Source: Takakia lepidozioides (taxonomy: Eukaryota; Plantae; Bryophyta). From it: a DNA stretch of 64,000 nt. The position numbers were made by a program, and so were the translations under genes. The notes under the pieces were generated by a model, which worked only from the letters and a program-made list of their open reading frames with translations, was not told where the DNA came from and did no database searches. This document shows, piece after piece, positions 6,201-50,000 of this stretch. The stretch is from positions 63,860,001 through 63,924,000 of the forward strand of contig CM060733.1 of the NCBI GenBank assembly GCA_030704615.1, in the 5' to 3' direction. Position 1 is the first letter of the stretch. Each line of letters begins with the position of its first letter.

Positions 6201-6539
6201 AGAAACTGGAGTTCCTGCTTTTGGTGTTCCATGCCAACTCTTATCAAAGATTTCTGTCAAATCTTTTATCTTGGGATGTACCTCAGATCTTTCACCTCGT
6301 GATTGATCTTCTTCCCGTACCAATTCCCTTAATCTTTCTTGCAAAGAAAAAGAAGGAGTGGCATCCAACTCTAGTTCTTCCGATATGGGTGATGTACTCT
6401 CTGATCTTAATGGTGTGAAAGGTCCAGATGATTCCCCTATGTCTATTCCTCTCTCCCAAAGATATGGATAATTAGCTTTCAGATAGCTTTCTCTTTTTGC
6501 TGAATATCTCTGGCGTCTAGCTTCTCTTTCATCACTCAT
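3281..6539 (-). pseudogene. gag-protease polyprotein of element A (frameshifts and stops)
   Basis: Retrotrans_gag-like PIYSGKRDPDVHISQF...W..L...F..RF and LQQLKQKKHETVEEY; knuckles CTICKMDNHSTENC and CYYCNQPGHRKAAC; protease motif VLIDGGSGVNIM (3777-4091). Confidence 0.88.
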
Positions 6540-6560
6540 GTCCCATGTCTTTCATTTCTT

Positions 6561-10346: not shown

Positions 10347-10347
10347 G

Positions 10348-26054: not shown

Positions 26055-26707
26055 GTAAGTGGGGATGGAGATCGATGGGGATCGATTGGTCCACCGGGGA
26101 TCGACGGGGGGGGGGGGGGGGGTGGCGAGGGGCAGGGGACGGCGGGGATCAAGCAGGGGTGGGGGATCAAGGAGGGGTCTGGGGGATCTGTAGGCCCGGG
26201 GGATTGTCGGACGTGATGCCAGAGGGGGGACGGAGGGGATGGAATGAGGGTGGGGGATCGATATCCAAGGGGGTTCGGCGAGTAGGGGGATCGTGGGAGG
26301 AGGTGTCACGTGGCTCTAATGGGGACGGCGGGGATGAGCCGGGAGTGGGGGATCGCAGAGCCCGGGACCTGCGGCACCCTGGGGGACACGGGGTGCTGGG
26401 GGATCGTCGGAGGGGATGCCATGTTGGTCAGAAGGGGACGGCAGAGATCTCGTACGACGGGGGGATTCATAATCGAAGGTGGATCGCCCCGGCCGGATGG
26501 GATTCGGCTGGGGATGGACGGAAATTGCAACACGTGGGCGAAGGGACGGCGGGGATCAGCTGGGAGTGGGGGATCTGTGGCCCGAGGGATCTGCGCGAAC
26601 CGGGGGGACACGGCCGGGGGATGGTGTGGGGGGTGCCACTTGGACAGGTGGGGGACGGCGGGGATCGGCCAGGACTGGGGGATTTGTGAGCCTTGGGGAT
26701 TGGCGCA
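26055..26707 (+). repeat. G-rich GGGGATC-motif repeat element; continues at 33263-33378 and 47589-47940
   Basis: Same-strand G-rich GGGG(G)ATC(G) motifs on both sides of the chromovirus and of the TIR element. Confidence 0.7.
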
Positions 26708-29700
26708 GTGAGTCTTGGCCCACCCACCACGGTCCCATTGGACCGTGATGAGTCCCAAGACTCCCCACGACTCCCACCACAAGGTCTCCGCCCCCATGGT
26801 GAGTCCTATGCCACCCCCACTAAGTCCCACTAAGCTACCACCACCCCTTGTGGAACCACCCCCACCGCAACCCGGTGTGCGGGGCTCCACCTAGTGAGCG
26901 CCTCCGTCTCCTTGAGTGCCTTGGGCACTCAAGGGTGCTTCAGCCCCCGCAACTAATGTTGCCACTGCCCCCACCACAGGGGCAGCCCCTCATGTGTTCC
27001 GACCCCCTGCCCTCAAGGCAAAGGGCCGCGACACACACCCCTACCCACAGGGAGTCGATGTCCTCATCGACTTGTCCATTTTGTAGAAACGAACATCCAA
27101 GTTGTGGCGTCCCACATCAAGGAGTTTGTTTCCACACCATGGCGTCCCATGGCTAAGAACCAAACCCCCACTTGACTCTACTCTCCACTAGCTAGTTCGG
27201 CCGACTTCCTCCAAGTCCCGGCCAAGGGTGGAGCCTCTTAAGCTCCTCCCAGTGCACTCTTCTTGACCCACTGCAGGGCCAAGGAACGATCCTCCTCGAG
27301 GATCGAATCGCCTTACTGCAACAACATTTGCTTGCGACCGCTCGTGATGTCGCTTTTGGCATCACCTTGAGCAAGGGTTCGCCTTGAACCCTTTTTGACT
27401 AGGAAGATAACCTTGAACCAACCGTGTGCCTCAATCACTACAATTCGGTCCGCCTTAGAATGCTGGCCTGAGGTACGGGAACACGCCGAAGCTGCATTAC
27501 GACTTCGTCCCGAGGCTACACGATTATAGTACGTAAACGGAAGCACGTAGCTTCCGCGTTAGCCCGCACTACAAGGCAACCCCCTCGGTAGCGCAGTTAT
27601 AGTATGCGCATGCGCCACGTGCGCACTAGCACGTGAACTCCCAACGAAGGTGTAAGTTTCCTTACCCCTTGGGTGAGAGTATCCCGATTTCGGCACTACA
27701 CAAACACATGATTAATCCAATTTACCTCTCCCACTTTGTAAGCTTAGCATGCATTCTACACACTAGCCAACCATACCATGCATCACCATTCCAAACAAAA
27801 TAGGACACACAACATTTGGAAACCATTTCATTTATAACAAAATTTGTACAATACAAGTTTTTGCAATCGGATTCCTGAGCTATCTAAGCCGGGCTAAGCA
27901 TGCATTTCCTCCCCCACGATCCAAGGTTGATGTCCCCATCAACGCTTCTTCCGCTTTTGAGGTCGCCCTTCGAAAGCTGTAACTGCCTCGGATGCGTTTC
28001 CCATTTCTGAGGCACGCACCCAAGATGCCTCCACATGATGATAGCCCTTCTATTTCACGAGATACTCTGTTTCTCGATTCTTGAACCTCCTCGACTTAAG
28101 CACTGCCTCCACCTCGTACTCAGGTTCATTTTCATGATCTAACAGCACATGTGGCGGACGCAACACTTGATGCCGATTCGGATGCGCTTCATCTTTAAAA
28201 TAAGGCTTCAAAAGGGAGACGTGGAATACCGGATGCACCTTGCTATTTGCCGGCAACTCCAATTCATACACATCCTTATTCATAACCTTCCGGATGCGAA
28301 AGGGTCCCGCATACGGAGGTACGAACTTCGGACTCACTTCCGGAGGTAGTCGAAAATTCTTGATGTTCAATCAGACCTCCGTGCCTGCCTCAAACTTAAC
28401 CTCCCTCCGCTTCCGATTCGCCTGCCGTTCATACCGTTTCCTAGCTTTGGCAATGTTGTACTTTGCGAGCTTCAACAAACGCTCGCATTCTTCCAGCACT
28501 GCCGCTGCTGCCGGTTCCTCAACGTCTTGGGCGGCCCAACTTGTCGGCACCAGAGGTGCTTTTCCATAGACCAATACGAAAGGGGAAACTCCCGTTGCGG
28601 AGTGTTTTGTGTTATTATAACAGAACTCTGCCGCATCCAAGTGCTCCACCTAGTCTGATTGATCCGCCGACACGTAATTCCGCAAGATCTGCTTCACCAC
28701 GGAATTCACCCTTTCCGTTTGGCCGTCTGTCGTAGGTCGGAAGGCGGTGCTCATTTTGAGCCTCGTCCCCATTTTCTTCCAAAATACCCTCCAAAATTTA
28801 CTAGTAAACTTTGGATCACGGTCCGAGACAATATCCTTCGGGAGTCCATGATGCTTGAAGACGTGGGCGAAGTAAAGTCGCCCCGTCTCCTGCCCCGTTG
28901 CCGTCTCCTTGGTGGGGATGAAATGGCCCATTTTACTGAACCTATCCACCACCACCATGATTGCATCGAATCCTTTTGACAGTGGCATAGCAATCATGAA
29001 GTCCATCGAGACACTTTCGCAAGACCCCTCTGGAATCGGCAAGGGTTGTAACAGCCCCGCTTGCTTTTTGTACTCGCTCCGGTTTTGTTGGCATGTGGTG
29101 CATGTCTTGACATACTCCTCGGCCTCCTCCCTTAGTTTGGGCCAGAAATACTCTTTTTTCAAGAGTGCTGCGGTGCGCTTGACTCCGCCGTGGCCCGCAA
29201 GCGGGCCATCATGGCATTCTCTCAAGAGACTATCTTTGATCCCTCCCTTCAGCACGTAGAGACGCCTTTGCTTGTACCGGAGTAGTCCATTTTGCAAGTA
29301 GAACTGCGATTTAACCCCCATCCTCAAGTCCCGCATCACGGACTTCGCCATCTCATCCTTCCGGTAAGCCTTCCGGATCTTCCTCTGGAGCGCCGACTCG
29401 CCCTTGTACATTAACATGAGCTGCTGCTTTCTACTTAAAGCATCGGCCACCACATGTACTGGATATCCACGTCGAACACCGCCAAAGTGTCTTGCCACCT
29501 AAGTTGTTTTGGGGACAACTTAGGCTACGTGGCAAAATACTTCACCGTGACATTGTCCGTGAACACCTTCACCGGGTTGGAACCAACATAGTGGCGCCAA
29601 AGCTCAAGGCAATGCACCACCGCCTTCATCTCTTTCTCGTGCGTTGGCCACCGCCGCTCCATTTCATTCAGTTTCTTACTTTCGTAAGCCACTGGACGTC

Positions 29701-32700: not shown

Positions 32701-33262
32701 GGGCCTAGTGGAAATTCCCTTTGGTCGATGGCAGTCCGAAATAGCTCCCCACACCTTGGTCGGTTTCCGGCTCGCATGCTTACTCACTAGTTTTTGGACA
32801 CCAACGGGCTTGCACCGTTCTCGGGGTTACTACTCCCTATATATACTTCTGTGACTGTCCGCGGGGGTTTCACAAACAATCATGCCATTTTATGGCGAAC
32901 CACCACGAAAACCCTCGATTCCCGGTGATGAGTCGTGGTGAGTCTTGGCCCACCCACCACGGTCCCATTGGACCGTGATGAGTCCCAAGACTCCCCACGA
33001 CTCCCACCACAAGGTCTCCGCCCCCATGATGAGTCCTATGCCACCCCCACTAAGTCCCACTAAGCTACCACCACCCCTTGTGGAACCACCCCCACCGCAA
33101 CCCGGTGTGCGGGGCTCCACCTAGTGAGCGCCTCCGCCTCCTTGAGTGCCTTGGGCACTCAAGGGTGCTTCAGCCCCCGCAACTAATGTTGCCACTGCCC
33201 CCACCACAGGGGCAGCCCCTCACGTGTCCCGACCCCTGCCCTCAAGGCAAAGGGTCGCGACA
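26708..33262 (-). mobile_element. Ty3/gypsy chromovirus (possibly Galadriel-like), near full length, inactivated
   Basis: 5' LTR 32538-33262 (TGTCGCG...CGCGACA); tRNA-iMet PBS TGGTATCAGAGC at 32524-32535; gag, PR, RT, RNase H, integrase, chromodomain; 3' LTR truncated to 26708-27033. Confidence 0.95.
27940..32482 (-). pseudogene. Chromovirus gag-pol
   Basis: CFNCGEPGHMAKKC; LVDT*ASH; [10 protein letters not shown]; IHTDASDFAIGGVL; integrase HHCC zinc finger and VSDRDPKF/DGQTE core; YAGPF; chromodomain EYEVEAVL...EYLVK*KGY. Multiple stops and frameshifts. Confidence 0.95.
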
Positions 33263-34903
33263 CCCAGGCACGAGCGGGGGATCGTCGGAGGGGGTGATGC
33301 GTGGATGTGAAGGGGGATGCGGGGATCGGCCGGCCGTGGGGGATTTGTGAGGCCGGGATATCGGCGGCAGGTGGTGACTACGGAAGCCCAAAAAGGCCAT
33401 ACTCGTATACTACCCCGGAACATGGAATATTTTTGAGCCCGGGCTTAAGATTCCAAAAGCCCGGGACAAGATTCTCTTGCCTATGGTGTGGTTGAAGAAC
33501 ATGACGCATGTCTTATGTACCCTAAGTAACCTTAGTTGACCAAGGGTCTAAGTATATACCATGTATTTAACTTGTATATCTTTAAAATACAAATAACTCG
33601 TATGTACCTAGTAGTTGTACCTCATAGCAGGAGCACGATAACTGGACCTTGGAATGCCCGAGCTTTCTCCAGGCAGGTTTTGTGGAGAGTCTGAGTAAGA
33701 TTTTGGTTTTCTCCATCTATTGACAATGTTGAGTACTCAACACAGGTGATTCCAAAGACTGTTGCTGATTCGGGAGGTAGGGCATGTATGTCAACTGAAG
33801 GCATCATTGAGGTGATTTGCAATTAAAATCCAGTACCTTGCTCTTGACCAGCTTTTTATCTGGAGATGTTTCTATCCATCATCACTAGCATGCACGCTTT
33901 CTCAGTAAGATAAGGTCCTTGCAGACGAGATGGAGATGACATAGTGTGGACTAAGGATCCCATGTTTTCCATCTTACCCTTGAGATTCTGGTAATTCGCC
34001 AATTGGTACTCAACATTAGTGTTTAGCCCTGATTCAGTAGTCAACAAATCTTGTGACCCCCCCTCGCCGTGTTTATTTGACCAGCTTACTTCAGGTCAGG
34101 TAGTGCATGGGTTTTAGTTGGAGAAGGGGTCTCTCCTTTAGAGTATGCCTACATGGGCCATCCCCTATGGATTGATGATCTCTGAATGCTGGATGCTCAA
34201 CAATTGGGCTAAGGTATGCCCTGTTTTTCATTTCTTGCCTGCTATAAATACATCCTCCTAATCCCCAGGCCGATTTCTGGTGATCTGTCTAAAGAATGCA
34301 TTGACAGGTAGGGTCCCACATCAAGATATTTTCTGGGAAGCTTGACGCTTGACTGGTTGGAGAGGTACCTTAGACACAGGTGATTCAATGTGGGGGCCAG
34401 AGGTAAGACAGTCACCCAAAACTGACTACTACGGATGGCAAACCTAGTGGTAAGCCAACCCCTCAGGTGTATGCAAGAGTGTCATGTCAGTCAGATCTGG
34501 CTTTGTGTGCAGTGATGTGAACAAATGATATGGCATGATTAGGCATTAATGGGTCAGGTTCTTTGCATGCAGGCTTTTGATCGCCTTGTGTAAAATGAGG
34601 ATGCATTGAAAAGCTGAACCCAGACCACAGACAAGTACTGCACTGATTGCAGGATGTACTCATCAAGCTTGGAGTGCCCGAGCTTTCCTATAAGCTGATT
34701 GCCAGCACGCAGCAACAACCAACAGCAGAGTGAGTGCCCTGGATGCATGGCAGGTGATCAACAGCGTCAAAGAGTGGTCTCATGTACTGCACTGATTGTA
34801 GGATGTACTCATCAAGCTTGGAGTGCCTGAGCTTTCCTATATGCTGATTGTCAGCACGCAGCAACAGTGCCCGAGCAGGAAGGTTCTCCGTTGTTAGAGT
34901 ACA

Positions 34904-37097
34904 ATGGAGCCTCAAAGTGACATAGTAGAGTATGTTCAGAGAATGCTCAGAGATAGGGTCCCCTTAAAGAACATTGCTGAAGCATTGGGTATCCAAGATC
35001 CCAGACAATTGAAGAGATTCATGTCTAAAGCTTTGGGCCATCTCTTCAGGGTCTACCACCAATTCACTGTGGAAGAATTGTGCCAAAAGATAAGGGAGCT
35101 ACTTCCGATTGAAGAAAACGGGGTAAATTGGGGTATCAAACATGTCAAGGTGGCCTTATGTAGGCATAACATCAGGGCTTCTGGACGGAAAGTAGCTGCT
35201 GCCCTGACGATCATTTCAGGTTACCATTACGATCGCAGGCAATTGCAGAGGCTTCAGTACAACGTAACATTGCCAATGGCACTTTGGCATATCGATTGTG
35301 AGTAAATTCTTTGACAAAAATCAAAATCTAATAGTTTTCAAGAGTGTTTCCTATCTCTCATGCCCAGCATAGATATGAATATCTTTAGCCCGAAGGACTT
35401 GTCCCACTTCGAGTTGTTTCCTTTGGTTAGTCAATCCTTAGAGGTTGACAGTGCCCAGCCTCAAGCCAGCCCTTTGCATGTTGCCAGCCCCTTGTCGTCT
35501 AGGTAGCCTATGGTTGTAGAGAGACAGAGAGGGGGGAAGAGCATCGGAAGTTACAGGGGGGAGACCTGCATAGACCTGCATATAGACGGCGCATACACCT
35601 TTCTTGTCACTTCCCTTTCAGGATATGGAGAAGAAATAGCGCACCTGAAACTCAAATGTAGCTATAACTGCAGTGAGGCCTGGAAGTACCCCCCTTACAC
35701 ACTTCTCACCTGCTGCCAAAACTAATGTGGTGGGTCTCCTGTCCCATTATCAGTTTTTGGCAGGGTGGTGACATCATGCAATGGCAGGTTCCTCCCACCC
35801 TGCCCCACTGTCAGAACAATCCTCATTTGAAGGGCCTTGAGGAGTGCCGTGGGCACCCAAAATCTCTAGGAATGGTTGTGGAAACATATATTGTCGAGGA
35901 GATAGACGGATGATGTAGAGTATTGTACAAGTGTTTTCAGAAAATGCCAAGCACAAAATTTCACAATATATTTGACTTGTTCGTGTTTGTTGCAGCTTAT
36001 GATAAACTGGTGATGTATGGTCTTCGAGTTCATGCTGGGATCGATGGTGCATCCCACTTTGTGTTATGGGCAAAAGTTGCTCGAGATAAGAAAAAACAAA
36101 CAATCTTTGAACGATACAATGAAGCTGTCATGAAATTTGGACCTCCGTTAAGGATTCGATCTGATTTTGCAGCAGAGCATGTCCTCATCAAGCAACACAT
36201 TGAGTCTGCACGCCCTGACACGCCCAATGGTGCCTTTCTGACAGGGTCTTCCACCAAAAATCAAAGGATTGAGCATTGGTGGCGACACTTGTGGGAGAAG
36301 GTGATGTTCTTCTATAAGAACTGCTTTCAAGCTATGGAGGACAGAGGTTTGTTGGACAGAGACGATCCATTTCAACTGGAATCTTTTATCGCAATCTATC
36401 TTCCCATTGTCCAAGCAGCCGTGGAGGAGTATGTGGGCATTTGGAATGCCCACCTTGTTCGTAGGATCAACGAAAATGGGCGTTTTCGTCTAATGCATGT
36501 TCCAGCACGGTATTTCAAGGAGTATGAGCGTCTCCAAGGGTATAACCATTATCTCATTTGCTTTTTAACTTGTGTTTTGGTTGGTCTGGTTCCTCTTCAC
36601 CACATATACTATCTTCGTTCAGAGATGGGTTGAGCTTTCAACTTCCAGTTTGTAATTTTTGCACCAGCCAGCGAATTTTCAAAAGAGAGAGGGAGAGAGC
36701 TGAGAGGTAGGTTACTTTATTTTACATGTGTGATGATTGAATTGTGTGCAGGTGGACCAGCCACATTGAGGATTTACATCATTTGGAGATAGCTGATCGC
36801 ATAGGTTCACAAGACTTGGGGCCTCGTGGGATGCAACAGTGGAGGCCGAGGATCACGCGAAATCGAGTTACACCTCCAAAAGTTCCCGAGCTTCCTCCAA
36901 ATCTTATTATATTAAGGGATGCAGCATATAAGATTGGAAAGGTCGGAAAAGACTCAGTGCAGTGCTTTCAGCTTCATTACTACTTATCAGGTTGTCATAT
37001 TGCGACTCAAGCACAGATATATCTGGACAAAATTGATGTCACAGAGGTATGTGCAGCAAGCCAGGAGGCTCACCAGTTGCTGATTGCTCATAGGTAG
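34904..37097 (+). CDS. IS3/integrase-like DDE transposase; 3 exons (34904-35297, 35996-36539, 36752-37097), about 427 aa, apparently intact
   Basis: HTH-like N-terminus; spliced LWHIDSYDKL...VHAGIDGASH, FGPPLRIRSDFAAE and GSSTKNQRIEHWWR give a D-D-E triad; GT-AG introns with compatible phases (1 and 2). Confidence 0.85.
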
Positions 37098-39512
37098 ATA
37101 CTAGCAAGAGTGGCAGCCTTGGAAAAGGCCAAAGAGGTTCATGGTGACTAATCAAAGCTGGAGCGATAGACCTCGGACCGAGTTTGGACGGAAGAGAGAG
37201 AGTTGACAGAGAACTGCAGGGCATCTCACCTTGAAATGAAATCACCATCGCTATATCAGATACTGAAAGTACGACAGTTGCCCGAATTCTCTCTTTCAAG
37301 GACAAAGAGAGATGTGTGGTTTGGTTTTTCTTGGGCGCATGCAGCTGGAGAGATGGGGAAGAGTGGGTGGCTACAATAGCAGAAGGGGGTTCGGCAGGAG
37401 ACTGGCTGAGCAACTCAGTCTACAGTGCAGGACAACAGGCCAATAACCTTGTACAGCTCCAACTCACTGGCGCCCTCACTTCCGCCATGTTACTTTGTGT
37501 CCTGTGTTCAGTAGCCAGGGCAGTTCCATGTGAACACATTAAGCTGTGCTTGATTGGGAGCCTGGAGTGGGTGGTAGCTAGAACAGTGAAAGGAGCTTCA
37601 GAGAGCTTAGTTGTGAATTTGTCTATTGCAACTTCCATTGAGCTTTGAGGGGCACACTCTGATGCATTTTGGGTTTGTTGTCATTGATTTAGACTTGGCC
37701 AGTTTTTGGCTCCTCCATCCCATGCATGCAACTATCCCAAAGCTCTATAATTTGCTGAACAAGTCTGGCTTTGGGTGAAGGGTGATTTGAATTCACTACT
37801 CTCCTTTACCTTCAACCTATGGCTTGCTGCAGCAATGGTGGGAGGGGGGAAGCTCACTACCTATAGTGAACTGCCATAGCTTATGAACTCTGGTTAGGTA
37901 TGGACATTGTCTGGGTGGTTCTTTTGCCATTATTTCTATAATGCAATTGAGAGACGGGTTAACTATCAGTGGCGAGGGTGTGACAGTGTGGTCATAATTC
38001 TGGGAATGCTATTGTTTAGTTTCTGAATACCACAGACATTCTTGCTTGTTTCAACATAATGCAGCGATGTGAATGGAACTGCCCTTCCCTACATGCTTTT
38101 CAATGAAGACAAGGTATTGAATTACAGATCCTTCGAAAACTGTTTACTCCGCACACCCCAAAGAGAAGAGAAACATGACCTCTTGTCACATCTCCTTTGA
38201 TGGCGCAGAACAACGTTGTGCTGGAGTGAAATGTTGAATTGAGAAGCTATCCTGGATGACACATTATTATAAGAGTATTTAATTAACTGCCAATTGCAGT
38301 TTCAATCTAACCCTGCCTGTGGGTCCTACCCAAATCCATAATTTTAACATTATTATGTAATCTAAAATCCAGTCTTACCAGCAGCTTTGTTAAGCTGCAC
38401 CTGGTAAGCAGGTTAAGTACAAGTGCCCTTGATGGTGAGAGATCACCACTAGACCTGCACTCTAAAAGTGAAGGTGTCTTGTCCAACTGAGCTTTCAGGG
38501 GAAGGCACAATTCAAGTGAGCTTGATGCCTGGGAAAACGGGCCTTCAGGGTGCCTTCTGACATCTTTTCTATTCAATCCATACATGCTACAGTGTTGTCC
38601 TTCTGCACACTTAACTCTTGTTCAGTTAGGACCTACAAAAGTTCCACCCTTCAGCATATACAACGCTCCAGACAGATAAGAGGCACTATCTAACTGTCAA
38701 CTGCAGTTGAACCATTGACACTTGTACACAACAATTGGGTGGTGGAAGCAGACAAAAGTACTATCAATCTTCATCCAAAATTTCTTAACCTCTTTTGCAA
38801 GACTACTAATAATAATTATCTTTCATCTCAAAACTCATTTATCAGTTTCAGCTTTGAATATTCCATTCATCCATACCAATTTTAGATGTAAAAGATTCAA
38901 GAAAGTTCATTGTTCATCTATCAATTTCAACGTATGTAGCTTTGAATATTAAATTGATCCATACCAATTTGAATGTAAAAGATTCAAGAAAGCCTTCTTC
39001 CTCTTGCATACTGGTTGTGTGGCCCTTCAGGAGCAGCAAGTCCATCAGCACATTTGTCAGCAGTGGATAGTAGGTCTGTAAGATACTAAGATGACAACAG
39101 AAGACATTGATGGCTGCAATCAAGAGGCGTCTACTCCACCTTTGCGGGTAGCTGTCTTTCCCAGGGAAATTCAGGCTAGAGGGCAGCAATTTGCCTTCCC
39201 CCCACGTTTTGGATCACCTACAACACCTTCTACTTCTAGGCCACGTACTCCCCGCCCTAAACAAATTGGCAGGAGGATTTACTTTTGGCCCAGGTCTGCC
39301 CAATGGACTCAAATCAAAGGCATACTGGTACCTCTTTTTGGTTGAATGGCCAAAGGACCTCCCCTCAGTGCTAGTATCTCTTCCTGCATCAACTATTTGG
39401 GGAGGGTTCACTTACCCAGAGCCATTTTCAGTGGACAGTGTATTGTTCCAGGTTGCAAAGTCGTTTTCAACTCCTCCAACTGCCTCGGGCCTTTTTTTCA
39501 AGAGGTCAAAGA

Positions 39513-40182
39513 TTGTACTCATAAGACGTTGTTTGCCGTAGCCTTGTGGCCATCGACCCCGCGCCCAGTTTGAGCGGGAACAAAAGGGACAGAACCTACC
39601 TCTGTCAGGGGCTGACGTTGGTAGTAAGACTTACCTCCATATAAAGAATTAATCCGGGTTTTCCAGATATCCTCTAGAAATCCCTTCACACAAGCATCAA
39701 TCTGCTGTGTGTGATTTGCCCAAAAACTAGGCCTCAGGAGGGCCTGGGCTTTTGGCTCAGCCTCGAGACTCTCAAAGTTGGTAAACAGGGGTACAGGCAC
39801 AATTCCCTTAATAGATTTGAAGAGAGCGTCTCTTTGGTGAGAAAACCCCGGACAGTGTATCAGAAAATGAATACTGTCTTCAGATTGCCCACACAACGGG
39901 CAATTGCACTCTCCCTTTCCTCTCTGCTTCTGTTTGCTGTTCAAAGGTAGGCTTCCTGCCCTGAGTTTAAATTTCAGTCTAGTGCCGAGAGTGGGTAGAC
40001 CCTTGAGGTCATCCAAGATGTCCTCCCCCATGTCACAGACTGGAAACAAGTTCAGGGAAGTTTTCTGCCTAACTTCATTTTCATCAGACAATCTCATGGC
40101 AACAGACATGGCTGAGGACACTACAGCCTCTAAGTCAGATTTATCCAGCAGGGTCAAGACTTGCGGATCCAGGTCCAGGTCC
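39513..40182 (-). mobile_element. 5'-truncated LINE 3' end with a 17-bp TSD
   Basis: TTTCAAGAGGTCAAAGA at 39496-39512 and 40183-40199; C-terminal CCHC motif CPLCGQSEDSIHFLIHCP. Confidence 0.88.
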
Positions 40183-41569
40183 TTTCAAGAGGTCAAAGAG
40201 ACCACAAGGATCAGCCCCTCATAGGGGTTTGATGTTGACACAATCCTCCAAGATCCTGCCTTCACTAAGTTCACAAAGAGCCAACTAGGTCTTATGTGTA
40301 AGCCAACCACAGAAAACAGGAGGGAGGAGGAATCTTCTTTACTTGATGCCCGAGAGAAGGTAGATGACGCGTTGCTGGCATATCAACGCTACTATCTTTC
40401 TCACACTGTTTTTGAAGGCTACAACCATATGCTCAGGACCTCTACACAGATTCAGGACACACATATCCAGGTACATGTGTACTACTATGTGGCATATGCC
40501 TACTATGCCACCACTCTGGTTTAAGCCAATCCTTGACTTCCTTGCTCAGACTAGTTCATTCATGATGATCAATGCCTACCGCTACTTTGCATATAGGGAT
40601 AACCAGAAGGTCATTCCCATTGATTCTGCAATCCTAATGAGCCTAGTTTAATGCCTGTTTTATGCTCTATACGTAGGTACACCAAGGGCGGGAGTTTCTA
40701 ATATTTGCCACACACTGGGGGGATGGTTTGCGCACCAACAAACTCTGCTATAGACCAAAAATCAACTATGTTCACGGGAGTGGAATAGAAGAGATGGGGA
40801 CAATTGACGAGAATGGTTTGAGAGATAGTTGGTTGACGAACATTTGGGAACAGTTCTGGTCCCTCCCTTAGGTAAGAATACGCTCCCTGCCCACTAGGAA
40901 GCCTAGGAAGCCCCTTCTAGTTTGAAGTGCCCATTGTGCCACAACTAACAGAGGGAAACCCAAAGAGACAAGAAGACAACACAAAAAATAGATAGCGAGA
41001 GCAAGATACCTTTCATGAAGGAAAGAGATGAGCCAGCATTGGAGGTTGCAAAGGACAACAGTGAGGAGCCAGCCAGTAGGAGGCTGCCACCACTGCCACC
41101 ACTGCCCCCTGATGATGGTGGCGTGGTGTTGCCAGTGGCTGAGGTGCCCATACCCATAGCATCACCATGTGCATCTTCAGTTGTAGGCTTCAGACCAAAC
41201 ACGTGAACTGTGCCTTTGTCACTGGAGAGCCCCAGCCATTGAGCATTTGCTGAGAAAGCGATACTGTAAATGTTTTGGTCAGCTCCTCGCCGAAGCTGCT
41301 CACAAAACCACAGGGCTCTTTAGTATCTCTACAATAACATACTTCAATATCCCTTCTATGACTGTCAATCCATTGGCATCACAGCCAATCATGGTTGGTT
41401 TGCTGTCTTTCCTGAATGCAACATGGAAAGAAAGATTACAACAATTTTGGTTGGTTACAAGGAGTTCACTCATCTAAGGATCACTTTGTTTTGCTGGCGA
41501 TGTACTGTTTAAGTTCCCAATGTGCACTTCACTCTTAAAAGGAAGCGCTCATTTTTTTTTTTATATCAG

Positions 41570-42995
41570 AACCAGCAGTTGGGGTGAGACTGACAGATTT
41601 CGATATAGAGAATTGCATCTACAGAGTGAGAGAAAATGTGGCTGGTGAGGAGGGAGAGGCAAAAAGACAGACTTGTGGATTTCACTACATTTCTTTAATC
41701 TCCAAGGTGTGCATGTGGACAGTTGCTTGTGTGCATAAAAAATTCAACCTTACTGATATCTTTCATCAGGGACCTCTTTCATCTAGAGGTAGCTTCCATG
41801 AAGGCTAGGCTGGGGTGTGTTACTAAGTGTTTGGTGTGGGGGTCCCTTGCAGAATCATCAAGGGATATTTGATAACAGCCACGGAAAAATCTTGCATCCC
41901 AAGAGTGATGAAGATATCTTGAGGCCTGAGCAAGTAGACACGGTAAGTGCCATAATCAGCTACATCTTTAAGTTTTTCAAATCAGCCATGGTAAATTCAA
42001 CTTATTTACGTTAATTGTAACTGATGTGCACATTGTGTCATCCACAGGCACAGATGCTAGGACACCTCCTCTTCATGATTGCCTCATGTGGACTGGAGGT
42101 GTCTAGGAACTTTTCATTTGCAACACTGCTGATGATATGTGATCAAGTCCCTTCTTCAATGGACTTGTCAAAGGGGGGGTGTCCCAAGCTCCGCGGAGAC
42201 TTGGAGCGGGATTTCAGATTGGGATGGACTTCAAAATGGTCATTTCTTCAGCAGCTGCGCAAATCTAAGAACTATGAAGCTGCGCAAGAGATTGTCCACC
42301 AACTGGCTGCAAATGAATTGAACGAGGACCTTGGGTGGAGTTTTGAAAGTTTCAAACTGGATGAAGAAACTTGGCCTTCACAGGTATTGTCTTATATGCA
42401 ATGAAAACAAATGCATAAAAACAATATTTGTGCTTCAATTGCTTTTGATTGATATTTTTTGTCTTGATTGGTGGGTTCCAACAGGTGGAGGATAAGCTAG
42501 GAGCGATTGTGTACAGTCACCTTTTCAGTGGAAGGGAGACGGTAGGGAAAGCCCTACGCGAGGGCTTTTACGTGTCAGTTGCAACAGCTCCAACGTCCCA
42601 AGCAGTAAAGGAGAAATTGAAGGATTCTCTTCGAGACCGTCTGAGCCCCGAGAACCTCAGGGTGGTCTTCAATGGCGCTTGTGCCACTGAGGCACAAGAC
42701 TTCCTAAGGAAATGCAACTTTTGCTCGTCTGTGGATAAAACACAGCAAGACTTTTTCAAAAGTTGCATTGAGAAGATGACCTACACCGAGCGATCGCGCC
42801 TCTGTCTTCATCACGGGCCTCGAGTACTTTGGAGGCAAGGAGATTACCATCGACCTGTTAAACAGGATGGACGAGCCATGTGTTCAGGCGTCCACTTGTT
42901 TTTCACAGCTGTATCTCCCTCCTTACTAGGATGCGGACACAATGCTGAGAAAGATAAACTACTCAACTATGGACACTAGCTATGGGAGACCTTAG
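41570..42995 (+). pseudogene. HECT-domain E3 ubiquitin ligase (multi-exon, frameshifted); upstream exons may start at about 39050
   Basis: AGEEG; QMLGHLLFMIASCGLEVSRNFS; KALREGFY...LSPENLRVVFNG; FFKSCIEKMTYTERSRL-FITG...QASTCFSQLYLPPY*...MLRKI. Putative catalytic Cys codon at 42897-42899. Confidence 0.82.
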
Positions 42996-43369
42996 ATTTG
43001 CGTGCTGCCAGCACAAAATGGGGAAGGGCTTACCATAGCCAGCTTGTGAGTCGTGTGACTGGCCTTGGCCTCCTTTGACTGCGCATAGAAGGCTGTATAC
43101 ACTGCCGTAGCCTAGGTTGATTCCCCCACTGTCACCTGTAGCCCTCTACCTTGCAGCACATTGAGAAAACAATTGCTCACCTGTAAGCGCTGTTGTGTGT
43201 TTCCATCCACATAAAACCTGCCACCCCAAATCAAGGGCGTACATAGCATAAGATCATTTGGTAAGCATGGTGGTGTCTGAATCATTGTTTGGGTTACTTG
43301 CTTTCCCCACTGCCAGAAGTCTTTCAGGTGAAGCAGCCATTTGTTAAGGGTCAGGGAGGCCTCATGACA

Positions 43370-43660
43370 TGGATGGAGCTGTCAGAGGCCGTATTCATTG
43401 GAGCCCCACGTGTACAGCTCGCCACGCCCTTAGATCACCACACAGAAGAGCAAACTGATCCATAGTAAAAGATATCATAAATAGGAAAGAGAAGAAAAAA
43501 ACCTATAGTACATTCCAATGCATGTGCAAAACTTCCCAGGCCTTTCTCAGCACTAGCCCCATGATGAGGACACCAAGAATGTGACTTACAGGTGATAGCG
43601 CCCGTGTGGTAGCCACTGCAAGAAACCTCCACAACAGCAGGAAGGGCAGGCACTTGAACT
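43370..43660 (-). pseudogene. RCC1-repeat gene fragment (2 exons) inside the transposon
   Basis: VPALPAVVEVSCSGYHTGAIT, an intron, then GELYTWGSNEYG. Confidence 0.75.
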
Positions 43661-43854
43661 GCCTCCCTTTCTCTGTGTCTGAGACAAAGTTCAAACGTCT
43701 CTCTTCCCCTCAACCCTAGGATGTAGGTTCCAAGGATCATCTTATGACAGCCCTACAGATAGGTCTAAACAGATAAAACTTCAGCAAACGAAAGGAAGCC
43801 ATATCCATAAGACCGAGAACAAACATCCAATTGACATGGTCAGAAACCAGTGAC

Positions 43855-46800
43855 CTGCCTCATTGCACATTTCACTGGATTTTATGTACTCCCCAAGCTT
43901 CTGCTAACACGCAGCCACATTGAGAAGCAATGAACTCTGCCAAAAATTACTGCCTTGTTAGCGCCAGACAATCCACACTTGCATAATGGTGATCTCTTGC
44001 ATGAATTGCTAAATGCAACTGGCCAAAGATCTCCCACTTTTCTTGAACACACATGCATTACCAAGGGACATACATCTTTATTAGTTCAACCAAATAACAA
44101 GGGAACAACAATCCTAGAAACCAGCAACAATCACCTGGCTCTTTACAAGCTCCTCACCTTCCTCATCATTTTGTGGATTTACATGCTTGAAATCCCTAAG
44201 CCCCGGTCACGGCCATTAGAAGGTGTCCACCTTCAGACTACACTTGAAAGACCAGGTGTGGAAAATTGTTGTGTAGAAGTTTTACACACGTAAAGCAGGT
44301 CACTAAACTGGTCACTGATTACCTTATCATATTTGGCCTTGGCTACCTCAAACTTGGCTTCCTTGAATAGCCAGTTTCCCTGCACACACATTTGCAGAGC
44401 ATCACATACAGCATAAAGTCGATCTCATTCAGGCACAGAACATCTCCAGCAATTAGTATGTTGGTTTCCTTGCACCATCACTGAAGACAGCCTAAATCAG
44501 ATCTATACGCTCCTACTTCATACAAGAAAGTAGTAAAGTGAGTATAAAGGCATACCGTGGATTTGATTGTATCCACTTCAGCCATTATTTCTTTGAAATT
44601 GAGGCCTGTCCAATCCTGCCACCACAAAGAGTTAGCTTAAAATTCCGCTCATTGATGTTTATCATTGATAACATGAAGCAATCTTTCTATCTTTCTAAGG
44701 GACCAGAAACTACCTTTGTAAGGGGCTCACTCCGGTAGTATGACTTACCTTGATACAAACAATTAGTTCGGGTTTTCCAGATATCGTCTAGGAAGCCCTT
44801 CAAACAAGCATCAATCTGCTGTGTGTGAGCAGCCCAAGAGTTAGACTCCGACAGGGCCAGGGCTTTAGGCTCAACCTCAAGATTTTGGAAGTTGGCGAAC
44901 AGAGGTGCCAAGACATTGTCCTGAAGAGGGTCACTCTCTGGTGAGAATATCCCGGACACTATCAGAAAATGGATATTGTCTTCAGGTTGCCCACACATTA
45001 GGTGATTACAATCTCCTCTTCCTCTCTGCATCTGTTTATTGTTCAAGGGTAGGGTCCTGCCCTCAGTTAAAATTTCAGTCCAGTGCCAAGGGTAGGTATG
45101 CCCTTGAGATCATCCTTAAGGTCTGCCCATGTCACAGACTGGAAACAAGTTCAGGGAAGTTTTATGCCTAACTTCAATTTCATCGGACAGTCTTTGGGCA
45201 TCAGACATGGCTTTGGACACACCCCCCTCCAGGTCAGCTTCATCCAGTAGGGTCAATTCATCAGGACTGATATTCAGATACTTGAAAATCTCATCCACCT
45301 TTTCCCGCCAAGACTTGGCCTGTTTAACAGGACTGTCTTGCTTCCAATAAATAGATTTGATTACCTTAGGGTATCTGGTATTAGGGATGCGATTCAACCG
45401 ACCACACCATCTGACCTTGAATTTATCACGTCGAGAGCTTAAGAGAGGTACGCCAGATGCACCCCGAATAGCCACATTAGCTGTTCTAGAACAAGCTGAC
45501 ATGCTTTCTTTGAGCACTGCGGCCTGAATGGATTCTAGGGATTTAGCATAGTTGGAGTTGTCAACCCACACAGCAGATGCATGCTCCAAGGCCGGCCTTA
45601 TAACATTACAAGGATCAGCACAGGGTGAGTGTTGAGAGGCCCAGTCTCAAGCCTGTCGAAGATTAGCGAATGTACTCATCAGACGTTGCTTGCCTACGCC
45701 TTGTGGCCATAGACTCCACGCCCAGTTTGCGCGAAACAAAAGGGAACAGGCACTACCTTTGTGAGGGGGTCACTAGAGAGAGAGAGGAAAAGAGGAGTGA
45801 AGAACTGCACCAATGGTGTACAATTTTCCTGGAAGTATAGCCCGGCTTGAAAACTATCCAGAGTTGGCTAAAAAAACCTATGAAAGTACCTTCAAAGAAA
45901 ATATTTCGCCTTCACGATCACAGTCCAGCCATAGCACCAAATAGTCGCATCCACGGGCTTCTTGTTGCAGATGCTTACACACATGGGCCTGCCTTCATGC
46001 CAGTGTTCCATATGTTAAGAGGAAGCAAGTGTTCACTCATTATTTCCCAAATATCATTTACATTAGGAAGCCAACTCTGCTACTGGCATCCAATTCATTA
46101 ACTCCATCTCATCTAGCCTTTCTTTAGTGATGATAGAACTGATGACACGTGGCTTGAAGCAAATGGTGTCCCCTGATTAATCACAGGATTGAATGGTTGT
46201 ATCTTTTCCAACCAACTACAAATATTATGTAAACAGCAGATTCAAACAATAAAGGGTAACTTTAGTGCAAAACTTATCTACCTATCTATCTGGAAATTCC
46301 TTATTTGACAAGTGACTTCATGGCCTGCAGTGACTCTTCTATTTTGAAACAAGAAAAGCTGATGGTACAATAAAAATGATACAAATCCAGTGGCAGGAAA
46401 CCAAATCTTTCTATCTTTCAGGAAGCAATTAACTGGATAAGGCCAACTGGCAGAAGAATTGAGTGTGGGAGAAAGGGTTGATAAGCCAAAAAACCACCAA
46501 AAATTGCATAGATTATTCAAGCATGGACAGACTGTGGTCTGAGCTGTGAAAGGAATCGCTGGCCCACAGACTCATGTAGATGAGTATAAACAGTAAATGC
46601 ACTAATGTAAATGGATGACCCCTTGCCTGTTTCAAATCCTAACAATTCCACCTCCCATTGCACTGAAGCCCCTTCTGGAACAGCTTCTGGCCTGCACCCA
46701 ATCAATTTGTTTCCAGTTGCAATCATGGAGCAAAAGATAGCATGAGAGATCCCACTCACTAAAGTTTTAAAAATTGACCTTCATCTTTGTAAAGGACGTC

Positions 46801-47004
46801 AACCGCAATTAGACATCACGAGCTGGATTGGACACCAGCGTTGAGTTGGGAATTTGTCTGCAATGATTTGAAAGTGAGCCACATAGAAGTCTTCCCAGAA
46901 GAATACCTGGGAAACTTTTCATAGGCGTACTTGGAGACACTGTTGATAAGAGCAAGCTCCCCTGGAAGCATCAGTCGGAGACTCGTTTCAAGTCCCTCAG
47001 GTAC
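43855..47004 (-). pseudogene. PAS1: Internal fragment of PASTICCINO1/FKBP72 (end of last FKBP domain and start of TPR), 6 exons with introns
   Basis: Exons VPEGLETSLRLMLPGELALI...KFPR (46907-47004), PEAVPEGASVQWEVELLGFE (about 46622-46691), DWTGLNFKEIMAEVDTIKST (about 44556-44615), GNWLFKEAKFEVAKAKYDK, LRDFKHVNPQNDEEG and SSLLLNVAAC*QKLGEY; one in-frame stop. Confidence 0.85.
44687..45780 (-). mobile_element. LINE fragments (same family as 39513-40182) in a PAS1 intron
   Basis: EHASAVW...LESIQ; shared HKTSLNLFPVCDMG and HTQQIDAC(L/V)KGFL with the other copy; a short 3'-end copy at about 45670-45770. Confidence 0.8.
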
Positions 47005-50000
47005 CTGGAAAAGCATACAGACAACGGCTCATCCACAGAAGAAGTACATCAATCAATTCAATGTCCACAATGGTCACAACACTTACAGCAAAGACAGAAA
47101 CTGTAGGGTTGCAATCCTGTAACACTTGCTCCGCACCTTTCCTGGAACCAAAGTCACGGGAGAGACAAAAACGATTACCTTTAGAAAAGCCCAAAACCAA
47201 CGCCTTGTCTGTTAGGGCAGCGAACTCCAACTCAACATACACGTACTTGAGGTGTACTAGGTACAGGAGAAATATGCAGTGTATATGTTTAGATATACAA
47301 GAAGTATACGCTGACCCAAGGTCAACTAGGGTTAGTTACGGGACATGAGACATGACTCATGTTTTTCATCCAAGTCCCTGGGATGGGAATCTTATCCAGA
47401 ATCTTAAGCCCGGGCACTAGAATCTGTCCCGGGCTTTTGGAACATTAAGCCCGGGATAGAGAATAGTTTAAGAATATCTTTTGGCCCGGGCTAGAGAATA
47501 TCCTAGAGAATTTTAGAATCTTATGCCCGGAGAATCTTGTCCCGGGCTTTTGGAAAATTTACTAGTATGGCCTTTTTGGGCTTCCGTAGGTGACACGGGC
47601 GGGGGATCGTCGGCACGTGCATCAGGGAGGGACGGCGGGGATGAAGCGCGGGCGGGGGATCGGTTGGGTCCCGGGCTGGCGGGAGTCCGCTGGGGTCGGC
47701 GGAGATGAGGCCACGAGGCAAGAGAGGGGGCGGTGGGGATGTGGCGGGGGAGCGGGAGCGGGCCGGGAGAGGGGCCGGGGGGGCCGGGCGGAGGAGGATG
47801 GGGGTTGGGGCCGGGCGGAGGAGGATGGAGGTTGGGGCCGGGGGGGAATTTGACATTGGGCGCTCCGCACTTGGCCAGGGCTGCCGGAGGGGGGTCGGGG
47901 TGGGAGGCTCGGCTCCTGGCTGTTCTCGGGCCGTACCTGTCAGCTCAAGTGTGCGAAATAAAATCAAGCCACATCAATATGGCGACCGGTTTTCGCTTAC
48001 AATGCAGAACCTAGGATTATGAAAGAGAAGCTTCGGTTACCTATTCGTCAATTCAAAGTTCCAGTATGTCAAGTGTGGTTCACGGCCAGGGTCACGTGAC
48101 CCTACAATGAGACGATGAGAGGCAATGCTACAGTGGGTGGACGTGGAGGGGTCCTTGGAAAGAAGGAGCAAAACATGTCCCGGCTATGGGCTCTACAACA
48201 CCTCAAGCATGCTCTACCTCTTCCATCCCTACCTCAGCCAAGGTCTTTATGCGCATGTCTTCATCAGCAATGTCCTTGGGTCAAATCCTTTTTGTTGCAC
48301 TTTGTGCTGCAACCAGCTTGCCAACTTGAAAGCCTTATGGTTTGCTCGACTGAAGCAAGGCACTGCTGCAGGGCCTTGATGTGAAGCAACTTGAACAACT
48401 TACGAAGCATACGGCTCAACAGACACCCTCGAGATGCACATGATTAAGAGACACGTGTGCACCCCAAAACTGTGTGCGTCGACGCACGCATTTTGGGAGG
48501 GCCGCAGTTCGAAGCCTCTGCAAAGGTTTACAACCATCATCAATGTCAGACAGTCTTCAGAGATTTGCTGCAGACACACTAGTCATGACTGTACGTACGA
48601 GAACATATGTTACAACCTTGCGCTTCCCTTCAACAGTTTTGTCCTGCATGCAAGCACCTTCTTCACACTTTTCAAGCGGAATTCTCAGTATCATTAAAGC
48701 GACCAATCTGGAGGAGAGAGAGTAGAAGAGGACAGCATTCTGACACGAATTCAAGTGTGTGATACTCGTGACTACCGTTGCGAGGATGCTTCCCCAATTT
48801 TACTGCTCAACAGAACAACTCAAACTCCGGTTTGGACGAAGATTAACATTAAAAAGCTTGGATTTTGGTCAGAAACTGGGCAGTTGGTTGTCACCAGCAA
48901 AAAAAGGACCCAAGTTTATAGACAGTTGCAAACACAATCCTGCCCGTCAAGCAATGTTACATGATTGCTTTACACTGGACTGTAATAGTTCTCTGCCTTC
49001 GTGTTCATGACCAGGCACATGCAGGTATTACAGCTAAGAGGTGAGGTTTTTGATCGAATGACCAGAAAAACACTTCGAAAAATCCATTCTGTGGGAATAT
49101 TCAAAACTGTAATCAATCAATGCAGAGAAAATAATAGATTTATTAAAGACCAGTTGTGAGAGCTCTGCAGGTTTTCAGATAGCCAAGTTAATTGCAATTT
49201 GACAAGATCACAGGAAAGCCAATTTCCACAATGGGCAATCCAGATGAGTTCCCAGATGGATGGATCTCTGCTGGAAACATAAGTTGTTCCATTATCAACC
49301 ACGCACTTCACAAAGGAAATCTGTTTCTAACTAGAAATGAACAGGCATCAGCAGACCTGAGAATACAGGGGAGAAGATTTGGCTAGGAAAAGAGACAACA
49401 AGACTGACGACTTCCATTCTCACTCAACCATTAGTTGGGTAGTCCCTATGACATACATAGCAGGTTCTGGAGGTTCTGAAGTCTTAAACTTATCTAAAAG
49501 GTCAAGCATTTATGGGTTGGCCTTCACTCAGAAGCTTTAACTCCTGTACAGAAGAGTTGTGTTCTCTCACAGATGCCCGGATGGATCTGTGCAAGCCGCC
49601 ATACAAGAAGATTCCTCATAGGCAAAGGCAGGTCAAAGACATGTTGCACAGTGCCTTAACTCCGAAGTTTCAAACTTCCGCGTAGAAATCCAGCTCCAGC
49701 TAATTTTGCAACACAATTTTCTCTTGAACTATGGCTTAGTACTTAAGCTACTGTCACAATGGACCTTTCTTGTTATTGCAGAGAGGGATTGTACAGAAGG
49801 TGACACATTATAGGAACATAAAAACTCCACTGTCACCAAACAAATGGGACGTTTAAGGGCTCCGCAGAGGCCTCCCAAGAGATGGTTCACATCATACTGT
49901 CGTTATGGCATATCCACAAATACAGATACAAAGAAGGTCCTCCATTTCATGATAGAAATGATGGACCTTACCTTATTCCATTTGCGCCAAAAAGCATTGC

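What the first reader, a model, noticed from the sequence alone, without database searches (positions are those of the whole stretch)
33379..47588. 14.2-kb IS3EU-like DNA transposon in a plant genome: intact spliced integrase-type transposase with exact TIRs and TSD
Seen: perfect 25-bp TIRs beginning TAC and ending GTA, 250-340 bp of imperfect subterminal inverted repeat, an exact 6-bp TSD (GGTGAC), and a 3-exon ORF of about 427 aa with LWHID / RIRSD / NQRIE motifs and no stop or frameshift. Recalled knowledge (should be verified): TAY..RTA termini, a 6-bp TSD and an IS3-like transposase define the eukaryotic IS3EU superfamily, which I know mainly from animals and fungi; it is not among the classical plant TIR superfamilies. 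Inference: this is a land-plant lineage of such elements, and the unmutated TIRs and TSD suggest fairly recent movement.
Basis: partly seen in the sequence, partly recalled or inferred. Interest (0 to 1): 0.92.

Follow-up and report, generated by a model that had tools for sequence, protein, structure and literature searches.

The report
Complete GingerRoot (IS3EU) transposon copy
This is a complete 14.2-kb copy of a GingerRoot/IS3EU cut-and-paste jumping gene, a kind already described in mosses and clubmosses since 2019, so it is an ordinary element whose one notable trait is that its transposase gene is still unbroken and appears to be transcribed and spliced.

Summary
The element has perfect 25-bp terminal inverted repeats (TAC...GTA) and an exact 6-bp target duplication (GGTGAC). 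About 260-350 bp of imperfect subterminal inverted repeat follows each tip. A three-exon gene of exactly 427 codons has GT..AG introns and no stop or frameshift.

The protein is an integrase-type DDE transposase (Pfam rva_4, E 3.6e-33) with all three catalytic residues. Its motifs match published GingerRoot (Selaginella) and IS3EU rows almost word for word. Contigs from two runs that the tool guesses to be RNA carry both splice joints.

It is IS3EU-like, but this is not an undescribed plant lineage. GingerRoot (Cerbin et al. 2019) has a 6-bp TSD and TA..TA ends, was reported in lycophytes and bryophytes, and was shown in 2023 to be one lineage with IS3EU. Relatives with the same three coding blocks occur in Ceratodon purpureus and other contigs.

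The other 10 kb is a mosaic: two LINE-like tails, a PROPPIN exon fragment, and a weak, broken HECT-like remnant. "Recent movement" is only loosely bounded.

This scan has already followed up several copies of this family elsewhere in this genome, all called broken. This copy has the intact transposase gene.

Verdict: new member of a known kind, low interest.

The parts
33373..33378 (.). Left copy of the 6-bp target site duplication, GGTGAC
33379..33403 (+). Left terminal inverted repeat, 25 bp, begins TA(C)
   Evidence: 25/25 identical to the right TIR; no other copy in the window
33379..33640 (+). Left subterminal region, imperfectly inverted-repeated with the right end. It holds 2 copies of the motif CCCGGG-N(2-3)-AAGATTC, 60 and 82 bp from the tip
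34904..35297 (+). Transposase exon 1: N-terminal helix-turn-helix-like region, ending in LWHID with the first catalytic Asp (codon 35294-35296)
   Evidence: aligns to the N-termini of full-length relatives P0077 and P0005. tblastx gives 53-56% identity to L001 and L004
35298..35995 (+). Intron 1 (GT..AG, 698 bp), enlarged by a high-copy repeat around 35200-35600
   Evidence: X5 has a joint at 35295>35996, and X6 record 17 ends exactly at 35297. The intron is about 90 bp in L001
35996..36539 (+). Transposase exon 2: integrase-type catalytic core with the second Asp (36163-36165) and the Glu (36271-36273)
   Evidence: Pfam PF24764 rva_4, E 3.6e-33. 2536 relatives at E<=1e-3. D56 and E92 are invariant in 41 sequences. 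Model pLDDT 92, and all 50 listed PDB matches are retroviral integrases (catalytic cores or intasomes)
36540..36751 (+). Intron 2 (GT..AG, 212 bp)
   Evidence: the joint 36538>36751 (GT..AG) is seen in X5 and in X6 (a 928-nt contig), and not in DNA runs X1 or X7
36752..37097 (+). Transposase exon 3: C-terminal tail of 114 codons plus TAG
   Evidence: Conserved at 39-53% in L001, L005 and L007
39511..40184 (-). Fragment of a non-LTR (LINE-like) retrotransposon ORF tail
   Evidence: Only a weak zf-RVT hit, E 0.08. About 79% identical to 44697-45256
41176..41298 (-). PROPPIN (WIPI/ATG18-type) exon fragment, apparently captured host sequence
   Evidence: E 1.1e-5 to WIPI4 residues 230-271. Pfam PROPPIN E 0.025
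42021..42977 (+). HECT-like remnant (weak call). The C-lobe piece at 42780-42926 carries a TCF...LPPY motif. It is broken by a frameshift near 42797-42803 and an in-frame TAG at 42927-42929
   Evidence: Pfam HECT E 0.0028, 17.8 bits, below the cut-off of 23.9. Frames read. No relatives found
43438..44424 (-). Possible RCC1-like and TPR-like exon fragments (not established)
   Evidence: all sub-threshold, E 0.045-0.4
44690..45768 (-). Second LINE-like tail fragment, with a frameshift between 45109 and 45119
46520..47028 (-). Possible FKBP-type exon fragments (not established)
   Evidence: FKBP_C E 0.068; no PDB match
47230..47588 (-). Right subterminal region with 4 copies of CCCGGG-N-AAGATTC, 43, 59, 156 and 175 bp from the tip, in the same orientation relative to the tip as on the left
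   Evidence: all such motifs in the 64-kb window lie within 200 bp of the two tips
47564..47588 (-). Right terminal inverted repeat, 25 bp, ends (G)TA
47589..47594 (.). Right copy of the 6-bp target site duplication, GGTGAC

Best explanation
The stretch 33379-47588 is one structurally complete copy of a GingerRoot/IS3EU DNA transposon in a bryophyte-type plant genome.

Shown: TA..TA ends, 25-bp perfect TIRs, a 6-bp TSD, and an unbroken three-exon gene for a 427-residue integrase-type DDE transposase. The protein has an N-terminal HTH-like region, an RNase-H-like core with D-D-E, and a lineage-conserved C-terminal tail. Both splice joints are present in contigs of two runs that the tool guesses to be RNA.

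Inferred mechanism:
- The transposase binds the ends, probably through the CCCGGG-N-AAGATTC repeats that occur only within 200 bp of the tips.
- It cuts at the terminal TA and joins the 3' ends to target DNA with a 6-bp stagger.
- Repair of that stagger gives the GGTGAC duplication.

The remaining 10 kb is passenger and debris: LINE-like tails, a PROPPIN exon fragment and a broken HECT-like remnant. This fits the gene-fragment capture published for GingerRoot. Whether this copy can still move is not known.
For: - Ends and TSD.
- Gene model and DDE residues.
- Family assignment: Pfam rva_4 at E 3.6e-33 against rve at E 0.058. The published alignment rows SL_GR-020, SL_GR-005 and IS3EU-1_CGi show LWH(M/I)DSYDKL..IDG and STxNQRIEHW. 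The window has LWHID-S-YDKL..GIDG and SSTKNQRIEHWW.
- Defining features in the literature: 6-bp TSD, TA..TA ends, no HHCC motif, gene fragments carried, GC-rich TSDs, gene-poor neighbourhoods.
- Relatives: the same three coding blocks occur in Ceratodon purpureus chromosome V and in ENA and JGI contigs at 50-60% identity.
- Tree: a clade with the Coccomyxa protein, support 100/98.
- Fold: integrase-core fold.
- Splice joints in X5 and X6 and many related DNA contigs in X1.
Against: - No second TIR-paired copy with its own TSD could be inspected, because the host genome is not searchable with these tools.
- X5 and X6 are only guessed to be RNA. Some of their contigs come from a paralogue with a 16-nt deletion, and others retain intron 1.
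- No tree was built with Repbase IS3EU, IS3, IS481, Ginger or LTR integrase references, because those sequences have no reference here.
- No sequence-level match was found to bacterial IS3/IS481 models or to solved structures. Foldseek E-values are weak, 4e-3 and above.
- The interior is a decayed mosaic, which speaks against a very young, fully autonomous copy.
Confidence: 0.88

Rival explanations
1. It is an undescribed land-plant superfamily or lineage, distinct from anything known in plants.
For: No sequence-level hit to IS3/IS481 NCBIfam models or to PDB chains. At 14.2 kb the element is larger than the 3.9-12.9 kb reported in Selaginella.
Against: The motifs match published Selaginella GingerRoot rows. 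GingerRoot was already reported in bryophytes and lycophytes with a 6-bp TSD and TA..TA ends. Moss relatives are annotated in Ceratodon purpureus.
Confidence: 0.04
2. It belongs to another integrase-bearing group with about 6-bp TSDs: Ginger2/TDD, Maverick/Polinton, or a rearranged LTR retrotransposon.
For: The core folds like retroviral integrase, and Pfam rve gives a faint hit at E 0.058.
Against: There is no HHCC zinc finger in exon 1. No polymerase B, ATPase, protease or capsid ORFs are present, and there are no LTRs. rva_4 outscores rve by 30 orders of magnitude. The ends are TA..TA.
Confidence: 0.03
3. The copy is a dead relic. It is complete in outline but unable to move or to supply transposase, and the open reading frame survives only because the copy is young.
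For: The HECT-like second gene is broken. The interior is full of fragments. All other copies that this scan followed up in this genome were called broken (unchecked notes). Cerbin et al. found no expression and no identical copies in Selaginella.
Against: All 427 codons are open and D-D-E and the nearly invariant residues are kept. TIRs and TSD are perfect. Spliced contigs with 0-1 differences from this copy exist (X6 record 17; X5 records 9, 13, 14).
Confidence: 0.5
4. The pairing of ends is an assembly artefact or chance, so the two TIRs belong to two different elements.
For: No single DNA contig spans the stretch, and the left flank is a very high-copy G-rich repeat.
Against: The 6-bp flanks are identical (chance 1/4096). 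The TIR occurs only twice in 64 kb, in inverted orientation. Perfect-match DNA contigs tile much of the left 6 kb.
Confidence: 0.03

Closest known systems
GingerRoot (Cerbin, Wai, VanBuren & Jiang 2019, Genome Biol Evol; PMC6839031), described from Selaginella lepidophylla and detected in mosses
   Same: It shares the 6-bp, GC-rich TSD, the 5'-TA...TA-3' termini, long imperfect TIRs and a DDE transposase without HHCC or GPY/F motifs. It also shares carriage of host gene fragments and location among other TEs. The catalytic motifs are nearly identical to SL_GR-020 and SL_GR-005.
   Different: It is larger than the published Selaginella range (14.2 kb against 3.9-12.9 kb). Only 25 bp of the TIR are perfect, followed by about 260-350 bp of imperfect repeat with a CCCGGG-N-AAGATTC motif array. 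It combines an intact DDE gene with apparent gene fragments, a combination that is the minority in Selaginella. It carries a weak, broken HECT-like remnant that the paper does not mention.
IS3EU superfamily (Repbase, since 2013; Kojima & Bao 2023, PMC10045372)
   Same: It has TA..TA ends and a 6-bp TSD, and the transposase has WHID / RxRxD / NQRIE motifs. IS3EU and GingerRoot form one lineage with bootstrap 99.
   Different: Most Repbase IS3EU families are from animals and fungi. In my tree this copy sits in a separate, well-supported branch with unnamed environmental (ENA/Logan) contig proteins and a Coccomyxa green-alga protein.
Prokaryotic IS3 / IS481 and retroviral/LTR integrases
   Same: It has an RNase-H-like DDE core. 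All 50 PDB fold matches listed are retroviral integrases, either catalytic cores or intasomes.
   Different: There is no detectable sequence match to NCBIfam IS3/IS481 models or to PDB chains. There is no HHCC zinc finger. The ends are TA..TA, not TG..CA.

Membership tests
IS3EU/GingerRoot | 6-bp target site duplication | tested here: met
   GGTGAC at 33373-33378 and 47589-47594. The definition is in PMC6839031 and PMC10045372.
IS3EU/GingerRoot | 5'-TA...TA-3' termini | tested here: met
   The element begins TAC and ends GTA.
IS3EU/GingerRoot | Terminal inverted repeats (100-150 bp in Selaginella) | tested here: met
   25 bp are perfect, followed by about 260-350 bp of imperfect inverted repeat.
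IS3EU/GingerRoot | DDE transposase of the IS3EU/GingerRoot lineage | tested here: met
   Pfam rva_4 at E 3.6e-33. D, D and E are present. Motif-level identity to the published SL_GR and IS3EU rows. The nearest named relatives are 'integrase core domain' proteins of the moss Ceratodon purpureus and the alga Coccomyxa.
IS3EU/GingerRoot | Placement inside the clade in a tree with IS3, IS481, Ginger1/2, Polinton and LTR integrase references | not tested
My tree holds rva_4-type proteins only.
IS3EU/GingerRoot | No HHCC zinc finger upstream of the core and no GPY/F motif | tested here: met
   Exon 1 has only two Cys, 26 residues apart, and no CxxC. Pfam finds no integrase zinc-binding domain.
IS3EU/GingerRoot | Multiple copies in the genome, each with its own TSD | tested here: inconclusive
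   DNA run X1 gives 479 contigs at 90-100% identity and at least three variant end sequences, but no TSD of another copy could be read. Earlier notes from this scan list further copies; I did not check them.
HECT E3 ligase (second gene) | HECT domain with catalytic Cys, above Pfam's threshold | tested here: inconclusive
   Only a 49-residue C-lobe piece matches, at E 0.0028 and 17.8 bits against a cut-off of 23.9. It is broken by a frameshift and a TAG. No homologues were found.
Maverick/Polinton, Ginger2/TDD | pPolB/ATPase/protease/capsid genes (Polinton); rve-type integrase with associated domains (Ginger) | tested here: not met
   No such ORFs or Pfam hits in 33379-47588.

The most novel reading that the evidence does not exclude
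This may be a still-functional autonomous GingerRoot/IS3EU element. It has an intact, transcribed and correctly spliced transposase gene, perfect ends, and a defined candidate binding motif (CCCGGG-N-AAGATTC). If so, it would be the first copy of this superfamily in a plant suitable for a transposition assay. No activity has been shown for the superfamily in the papers I read.
Probability: 0.25. Interest if true: 0.45.

Novelty: new member of a known kind. Interest (0 to 1): 0.22.

Why it matters
It matters little for classification. It adds one well-delimited, full-length example to a superfamily already reported in bryophytes and lycophytes. Its practical value is as a candidate source of an intact GingerRoot transposase and matching ends for a mobility assay, and as a clean example of the subterminal motif array. 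The finding should not be counted as a new plant transposon superfamily.

Tried and rejected
- Exact-product look-ups of exon 1 and exon 2 are not on record. P0169 is not on record either.
- The HECT-like pieces gave nothing: the search for homologous proteins on 42449-42976 and 42021-42401 had no hit, the ESM Atlas had no usable hit, and PDB phmmer found no HECT.
- A regex for the HECT C-lobe motif and tblastx of the 37.1-47.6 kb interior against L001-L007 found nothing comparable in the relatives' 10-kb flanks. I therefore could not confirm, from my loci, the earlier notes that related elements carry the ligase.
- NCBIfam gave no IS3/IS481 model hit. PDB sequence search of exon 2 gave only chance-level rows.
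- L001 gave no recognisable TIR pair; its inverted repeats are AT microsatellite.
- No paralogous empty site spanning the insertion point exists in the window.
- The FKBP, TPR and RCC1 readings of interior ORFs stayed sub-threshold.
- The 93-nt skip at 37678-37770 in X5 and X6 has no GT..AG within its slack, so I take it as a deletion variant and not an intron.
- Each exon was handled by reference.
Full report
**Observation**

The 25-bp sequence TACGGAAGCCCAAAAAGGCCATACT lies at 33379-33403 on the plus strand and at 47564-47588 on the minus strand, with no mismatch. Even at three mismatches these are the only two occurrences in 64 kb, where shuffles give none.

GGTGAC directly abuts both ends. 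The inverted repeat formally extends one base further (C...G). That placement would destroy the duplication, so TA..TA ends with a 6-bp TSD is the parsimonious reading.

An alignment of the two ends shows an imperfect inverted repeat of about 260 bp on the left and 350 bp on the right, with indels. Within it the motif CCCGGG-N(2-3)-AAGATTC occurs twice on the left and four times on the right. All copies have the same orientation relative to the tip and all lie within 200 bp of a tip. The motif occurs nowhere else in the window (for the CCCGGG core). I take these repeats as candidate transposase-binding sites. That is inference.

**Gene**

Reading the sequence and counting bases gives this model:
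- exon 1: 34904-35297
- intron 1: 35298-35995 (GTGAGT..TTGCAG)
- exon 2: 35996-36539
- intron 2: 36540-36751 (GTATAA..GTGCAG)
- exon 3: 36752-37097

The total is 1284 nt, which is 427 codons plus TAG. An in-frame TAG sits immediately before the ATG.

Each exon was used by reference.

- Exon 2 matches Pfam PF24764 (rva_4, "integrase core domain") at E 3.6e-33, against E 0.058 for rve.
- An exhaustive HMMER search found 2536 relatives at E<=1e-3.
- Exon 1 aligns with the N-terminal 130-140 residues of the full-length relatives P0077 and P0005. The gene is therefore not 5'-truncated.
- Exon 3 has no match among distant relatives. It is conserved at 39-53% in the closer loci L001, L005 and L007.
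- The catalytic residues are present: D at 35294-35296 (LWHID), D at 36163-36165 (RIRSD) and E at 36271-36273 (NQRIE). The last two are invariant in a 41-sequence alignment.
- The exon-2 segment folds with mean pLDDT 92.4. All 50 PDB matches listed are retroviral integrases, either catalytic cores or intasomes, although at weak E-values of 4e-3 to 5e-2. This segment lacks the first beta strand, which lies in exon 1.

**Expression**

Contigs of two runs that the tool guesses to be RNA (X5, X6) were laid on 33200-39199.
- Intron 2: the joint 36538>36751 (GT..AG) is seen in both runs, in X6 within a 928-nt contig. It is absent from the DNA runs X1 and X7.
- Intron 1: X5 has the joint 35295>35996 with two letters between. 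That equals the 35297|35996 splice with one variant base, and it comes from a paralogue that also has a 16-nt deletion. X6 record 17 matches 35069-35297 without a difference and stops exactly at the exon end.
- Intron-retaining contigs also exist.
- One X5 contig suggests an alternative GT..AG intron at 34730-35049 that would remove the ATG.

The introns are therefore supported. The RNA nature of the runs and the copy of origin are not proven.

**What it is**

The literature defines GingerRoot by these features (Cerbin et al. 2019, PMC6839031):
- a 6-bp, GC-rich TSD
- TA..TA termini
- 100-150-bp TIRs
- a DDE transposase without HHCC or GPY motifs
- frequent carriage of gene fragments
- residence in gene-poor, Gypsy-rich DNA

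In plants it was found in lycophytes and bryophytes. Eighteen moss species gave read matches, and Physcomitrella appears in the tree. Kojima and Bao (2023, PMC10045372) state that IS3EU families have TA..TA ends and usually 6-bp TSDs, and that IS3EU and GingerRoot form one lineage with bootstrap 99.

Their supplementary alignment prints these rows:
- SL_GR-020: ...LWHMDSYDKLA-VYGFRFHGIIDGATRF... and ...PSTHNQRIEHW...
- IS3EU-1_CGi: VWHIDSYDKLKP

The window has LWHID-S-YDKLVMYGLRVHAGIDGASHF and SSTKNQRIEHWW. This direct comparison, together with rva_4, the TSD and the termini, is why I file the element as a member.

A tree with IS3, IS481, Ginger and LTR references could not be built because those sequences have no reference here.

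**Relatives**

The closest database proteins are exon-sized ORFs from long ENA contigs and JGI metagenome contigs, at 50-63% identity. They also include "integrase core domain-containing" proteins on chromosome V of the moss Ceratodon purpureus. L001, L004-L006 and L007 all keep the same three coding blocks.

In a tree of 41 core domains the window groups with P0001, P0002 and P0003. That group is sister to P0005 (Coccomyxa subellipsoidea) and P0025. The combined clade has support 100/98 and is separate from the other 35 representatives. Of those 35, the three whose source I looked up are a priapulid worm (P0021), a mushroom (P0055) and an unnamed metagenome protein.

Earlier notes of this scan call the host genome a moss and list several other GingerRoot copies in it, all judged broken. 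I did not check those notes.

**Interior**

The 10 kb after the transposase is a mosaic.
- Two LINE-like ORF tails lie on the minus strand, at 39511-40184 and 44690-45768. They are about 79% alike. The only family hit is a weak zf-RVT match.
- A PROPPIN exon fragment lies at 41176-41298 on the minus strand. It is statistically supported, with E 1.1e-5 to WIPI4.
- The FKBP, TPR and RCC1 readings remain sub-threshold.
- On the plus strand, 42021-42977 reads like a divergent HECT domain. Only the 49-residue C-lobe piece (RASVFITG...ASTCFSQLYLPPY) hits Pfam HECT, at E 0.0028 and below the cut-off.
- The HECT-like frame is broken by a frameshift near 42797-42803 and by a TAG at 42927-42929, right after LPPY.
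- I found no homologue of these pieces and no such motif in the flanks of the five related loci.

In this copy the ligase-like gene is therefore at best a pseudogene. My data neither confirm nor refute the earlier notes that it is a conserved passenger of the family.

**Age and copy number**

Zero changes in about 62 bp of TIR plus TSD excludes only divergence above about 5%, since exp(-62d) falls to 0.05 near d = 0.05.

An open 427-codon frame argues for youth or selection. The fragment-rich interior argues against a pristine element.

In DNA run X1, 479 contigs lie on the left 6 kb at 90-100% identity. At least three variant end sequences share the terminal 19-29 bp and the first subterminal motif, so related copies exist. 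Away from two embedded high-copy repeats, the summed depth is only about one to three times that of perfect-match contigs. This suggests a low-copy family at 90% identity or more, but the tool warns that depth is not copy number.

X1, X5 and X6 share several differences from the window. One of them (X1 only) is His to Asn at a nearly invariant position. They therefore represent another strain or the nearest paralogue.

**Context**

The element sits in a G-rich, very high-copy repeat. It lies 115 bp downstream of a 327-bp direct repeat pair (26708-27034 and 32938-33263, 98-99% identical), which looks like the LTRs of a young retrotransposon.

**Verdict**

The element is a new member of a known kind. 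Its only modest point of interest is the intact, apparently expressed transposase gene, which makes it a candidate for a mobility test.

Noticed in passing
window 26708-27034 and 32938-33263: Direct repeats of about 327 bp, 98-99% identical and 6.23 kb apart, directly upstream of the element. They look like the LTRs of a young retrotransposon. The GingerRoot insertion lies 115 bp past the second repeat.
   Followed up: no
window 35200-35600 (inside intron 1) and 37111-37148: Two short stretches with very high summed contig depth in DNA run X1 (2600-7170 and about 3470, against about 100 nearby), with loose ends at 35433, 37111 and 37148. These are embedded pieces of high-copy repeats. Intron 1 is 698 bp here but about 90 bp in L001.
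   Followed up: partly
window 33200-33399 and 47589-47990: The G-rich flanks are extremely high-copy: summed depth is about 76,000 in X1. There is a 27-bp tandem repeat at 47780-47842, and similar G-rich units at 26136-26355.
   Followed up: no
window 34632-34717 and 34781-34866; 34730-35049: An 86-bp duplication (94% identical) lies just upstream of the transposase ATG. One X5 contig supports an alternative GT..AG intron at 34730-35049 that would remove the start codon.
   Followed up: partly
window 37678-37770: A 93-nt skip without GT..AG ends is seen in contigs of X5 and X6. It is probably a deletion variant of an expressed paralogue or allele, downstream of the transposase stop.
   Followed up: partly
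P0005 (KAK9918548.1, Coccomyxa subellipsoidea) and P0025: A full-length (407 aa) rva_4 transposase from a trebouxiophyte green alga is sister to the clade holding the window copy and its nearest relatives, with support 100/98. The 2019 paper reported GingerRoot as absent from charophytes and did not mention chlorophytes, so the green-lineage range may be wider than published.
   Followed up: partly
L007 = Ceratodon purpureus GCA_014871385.1, CM026426.1 (chromosome V) 89408721-89429179: A related transposase at about 57% amino-acid identity, with the exon-2 block split in two (9794-10066 and 10178-10450). It is annotated only as short 'integrase core domain-containing' hypothetical proteins. 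It shares no DNA similarity with the window.
   Followed up: partly
I did not look at it.
   Followed up: no
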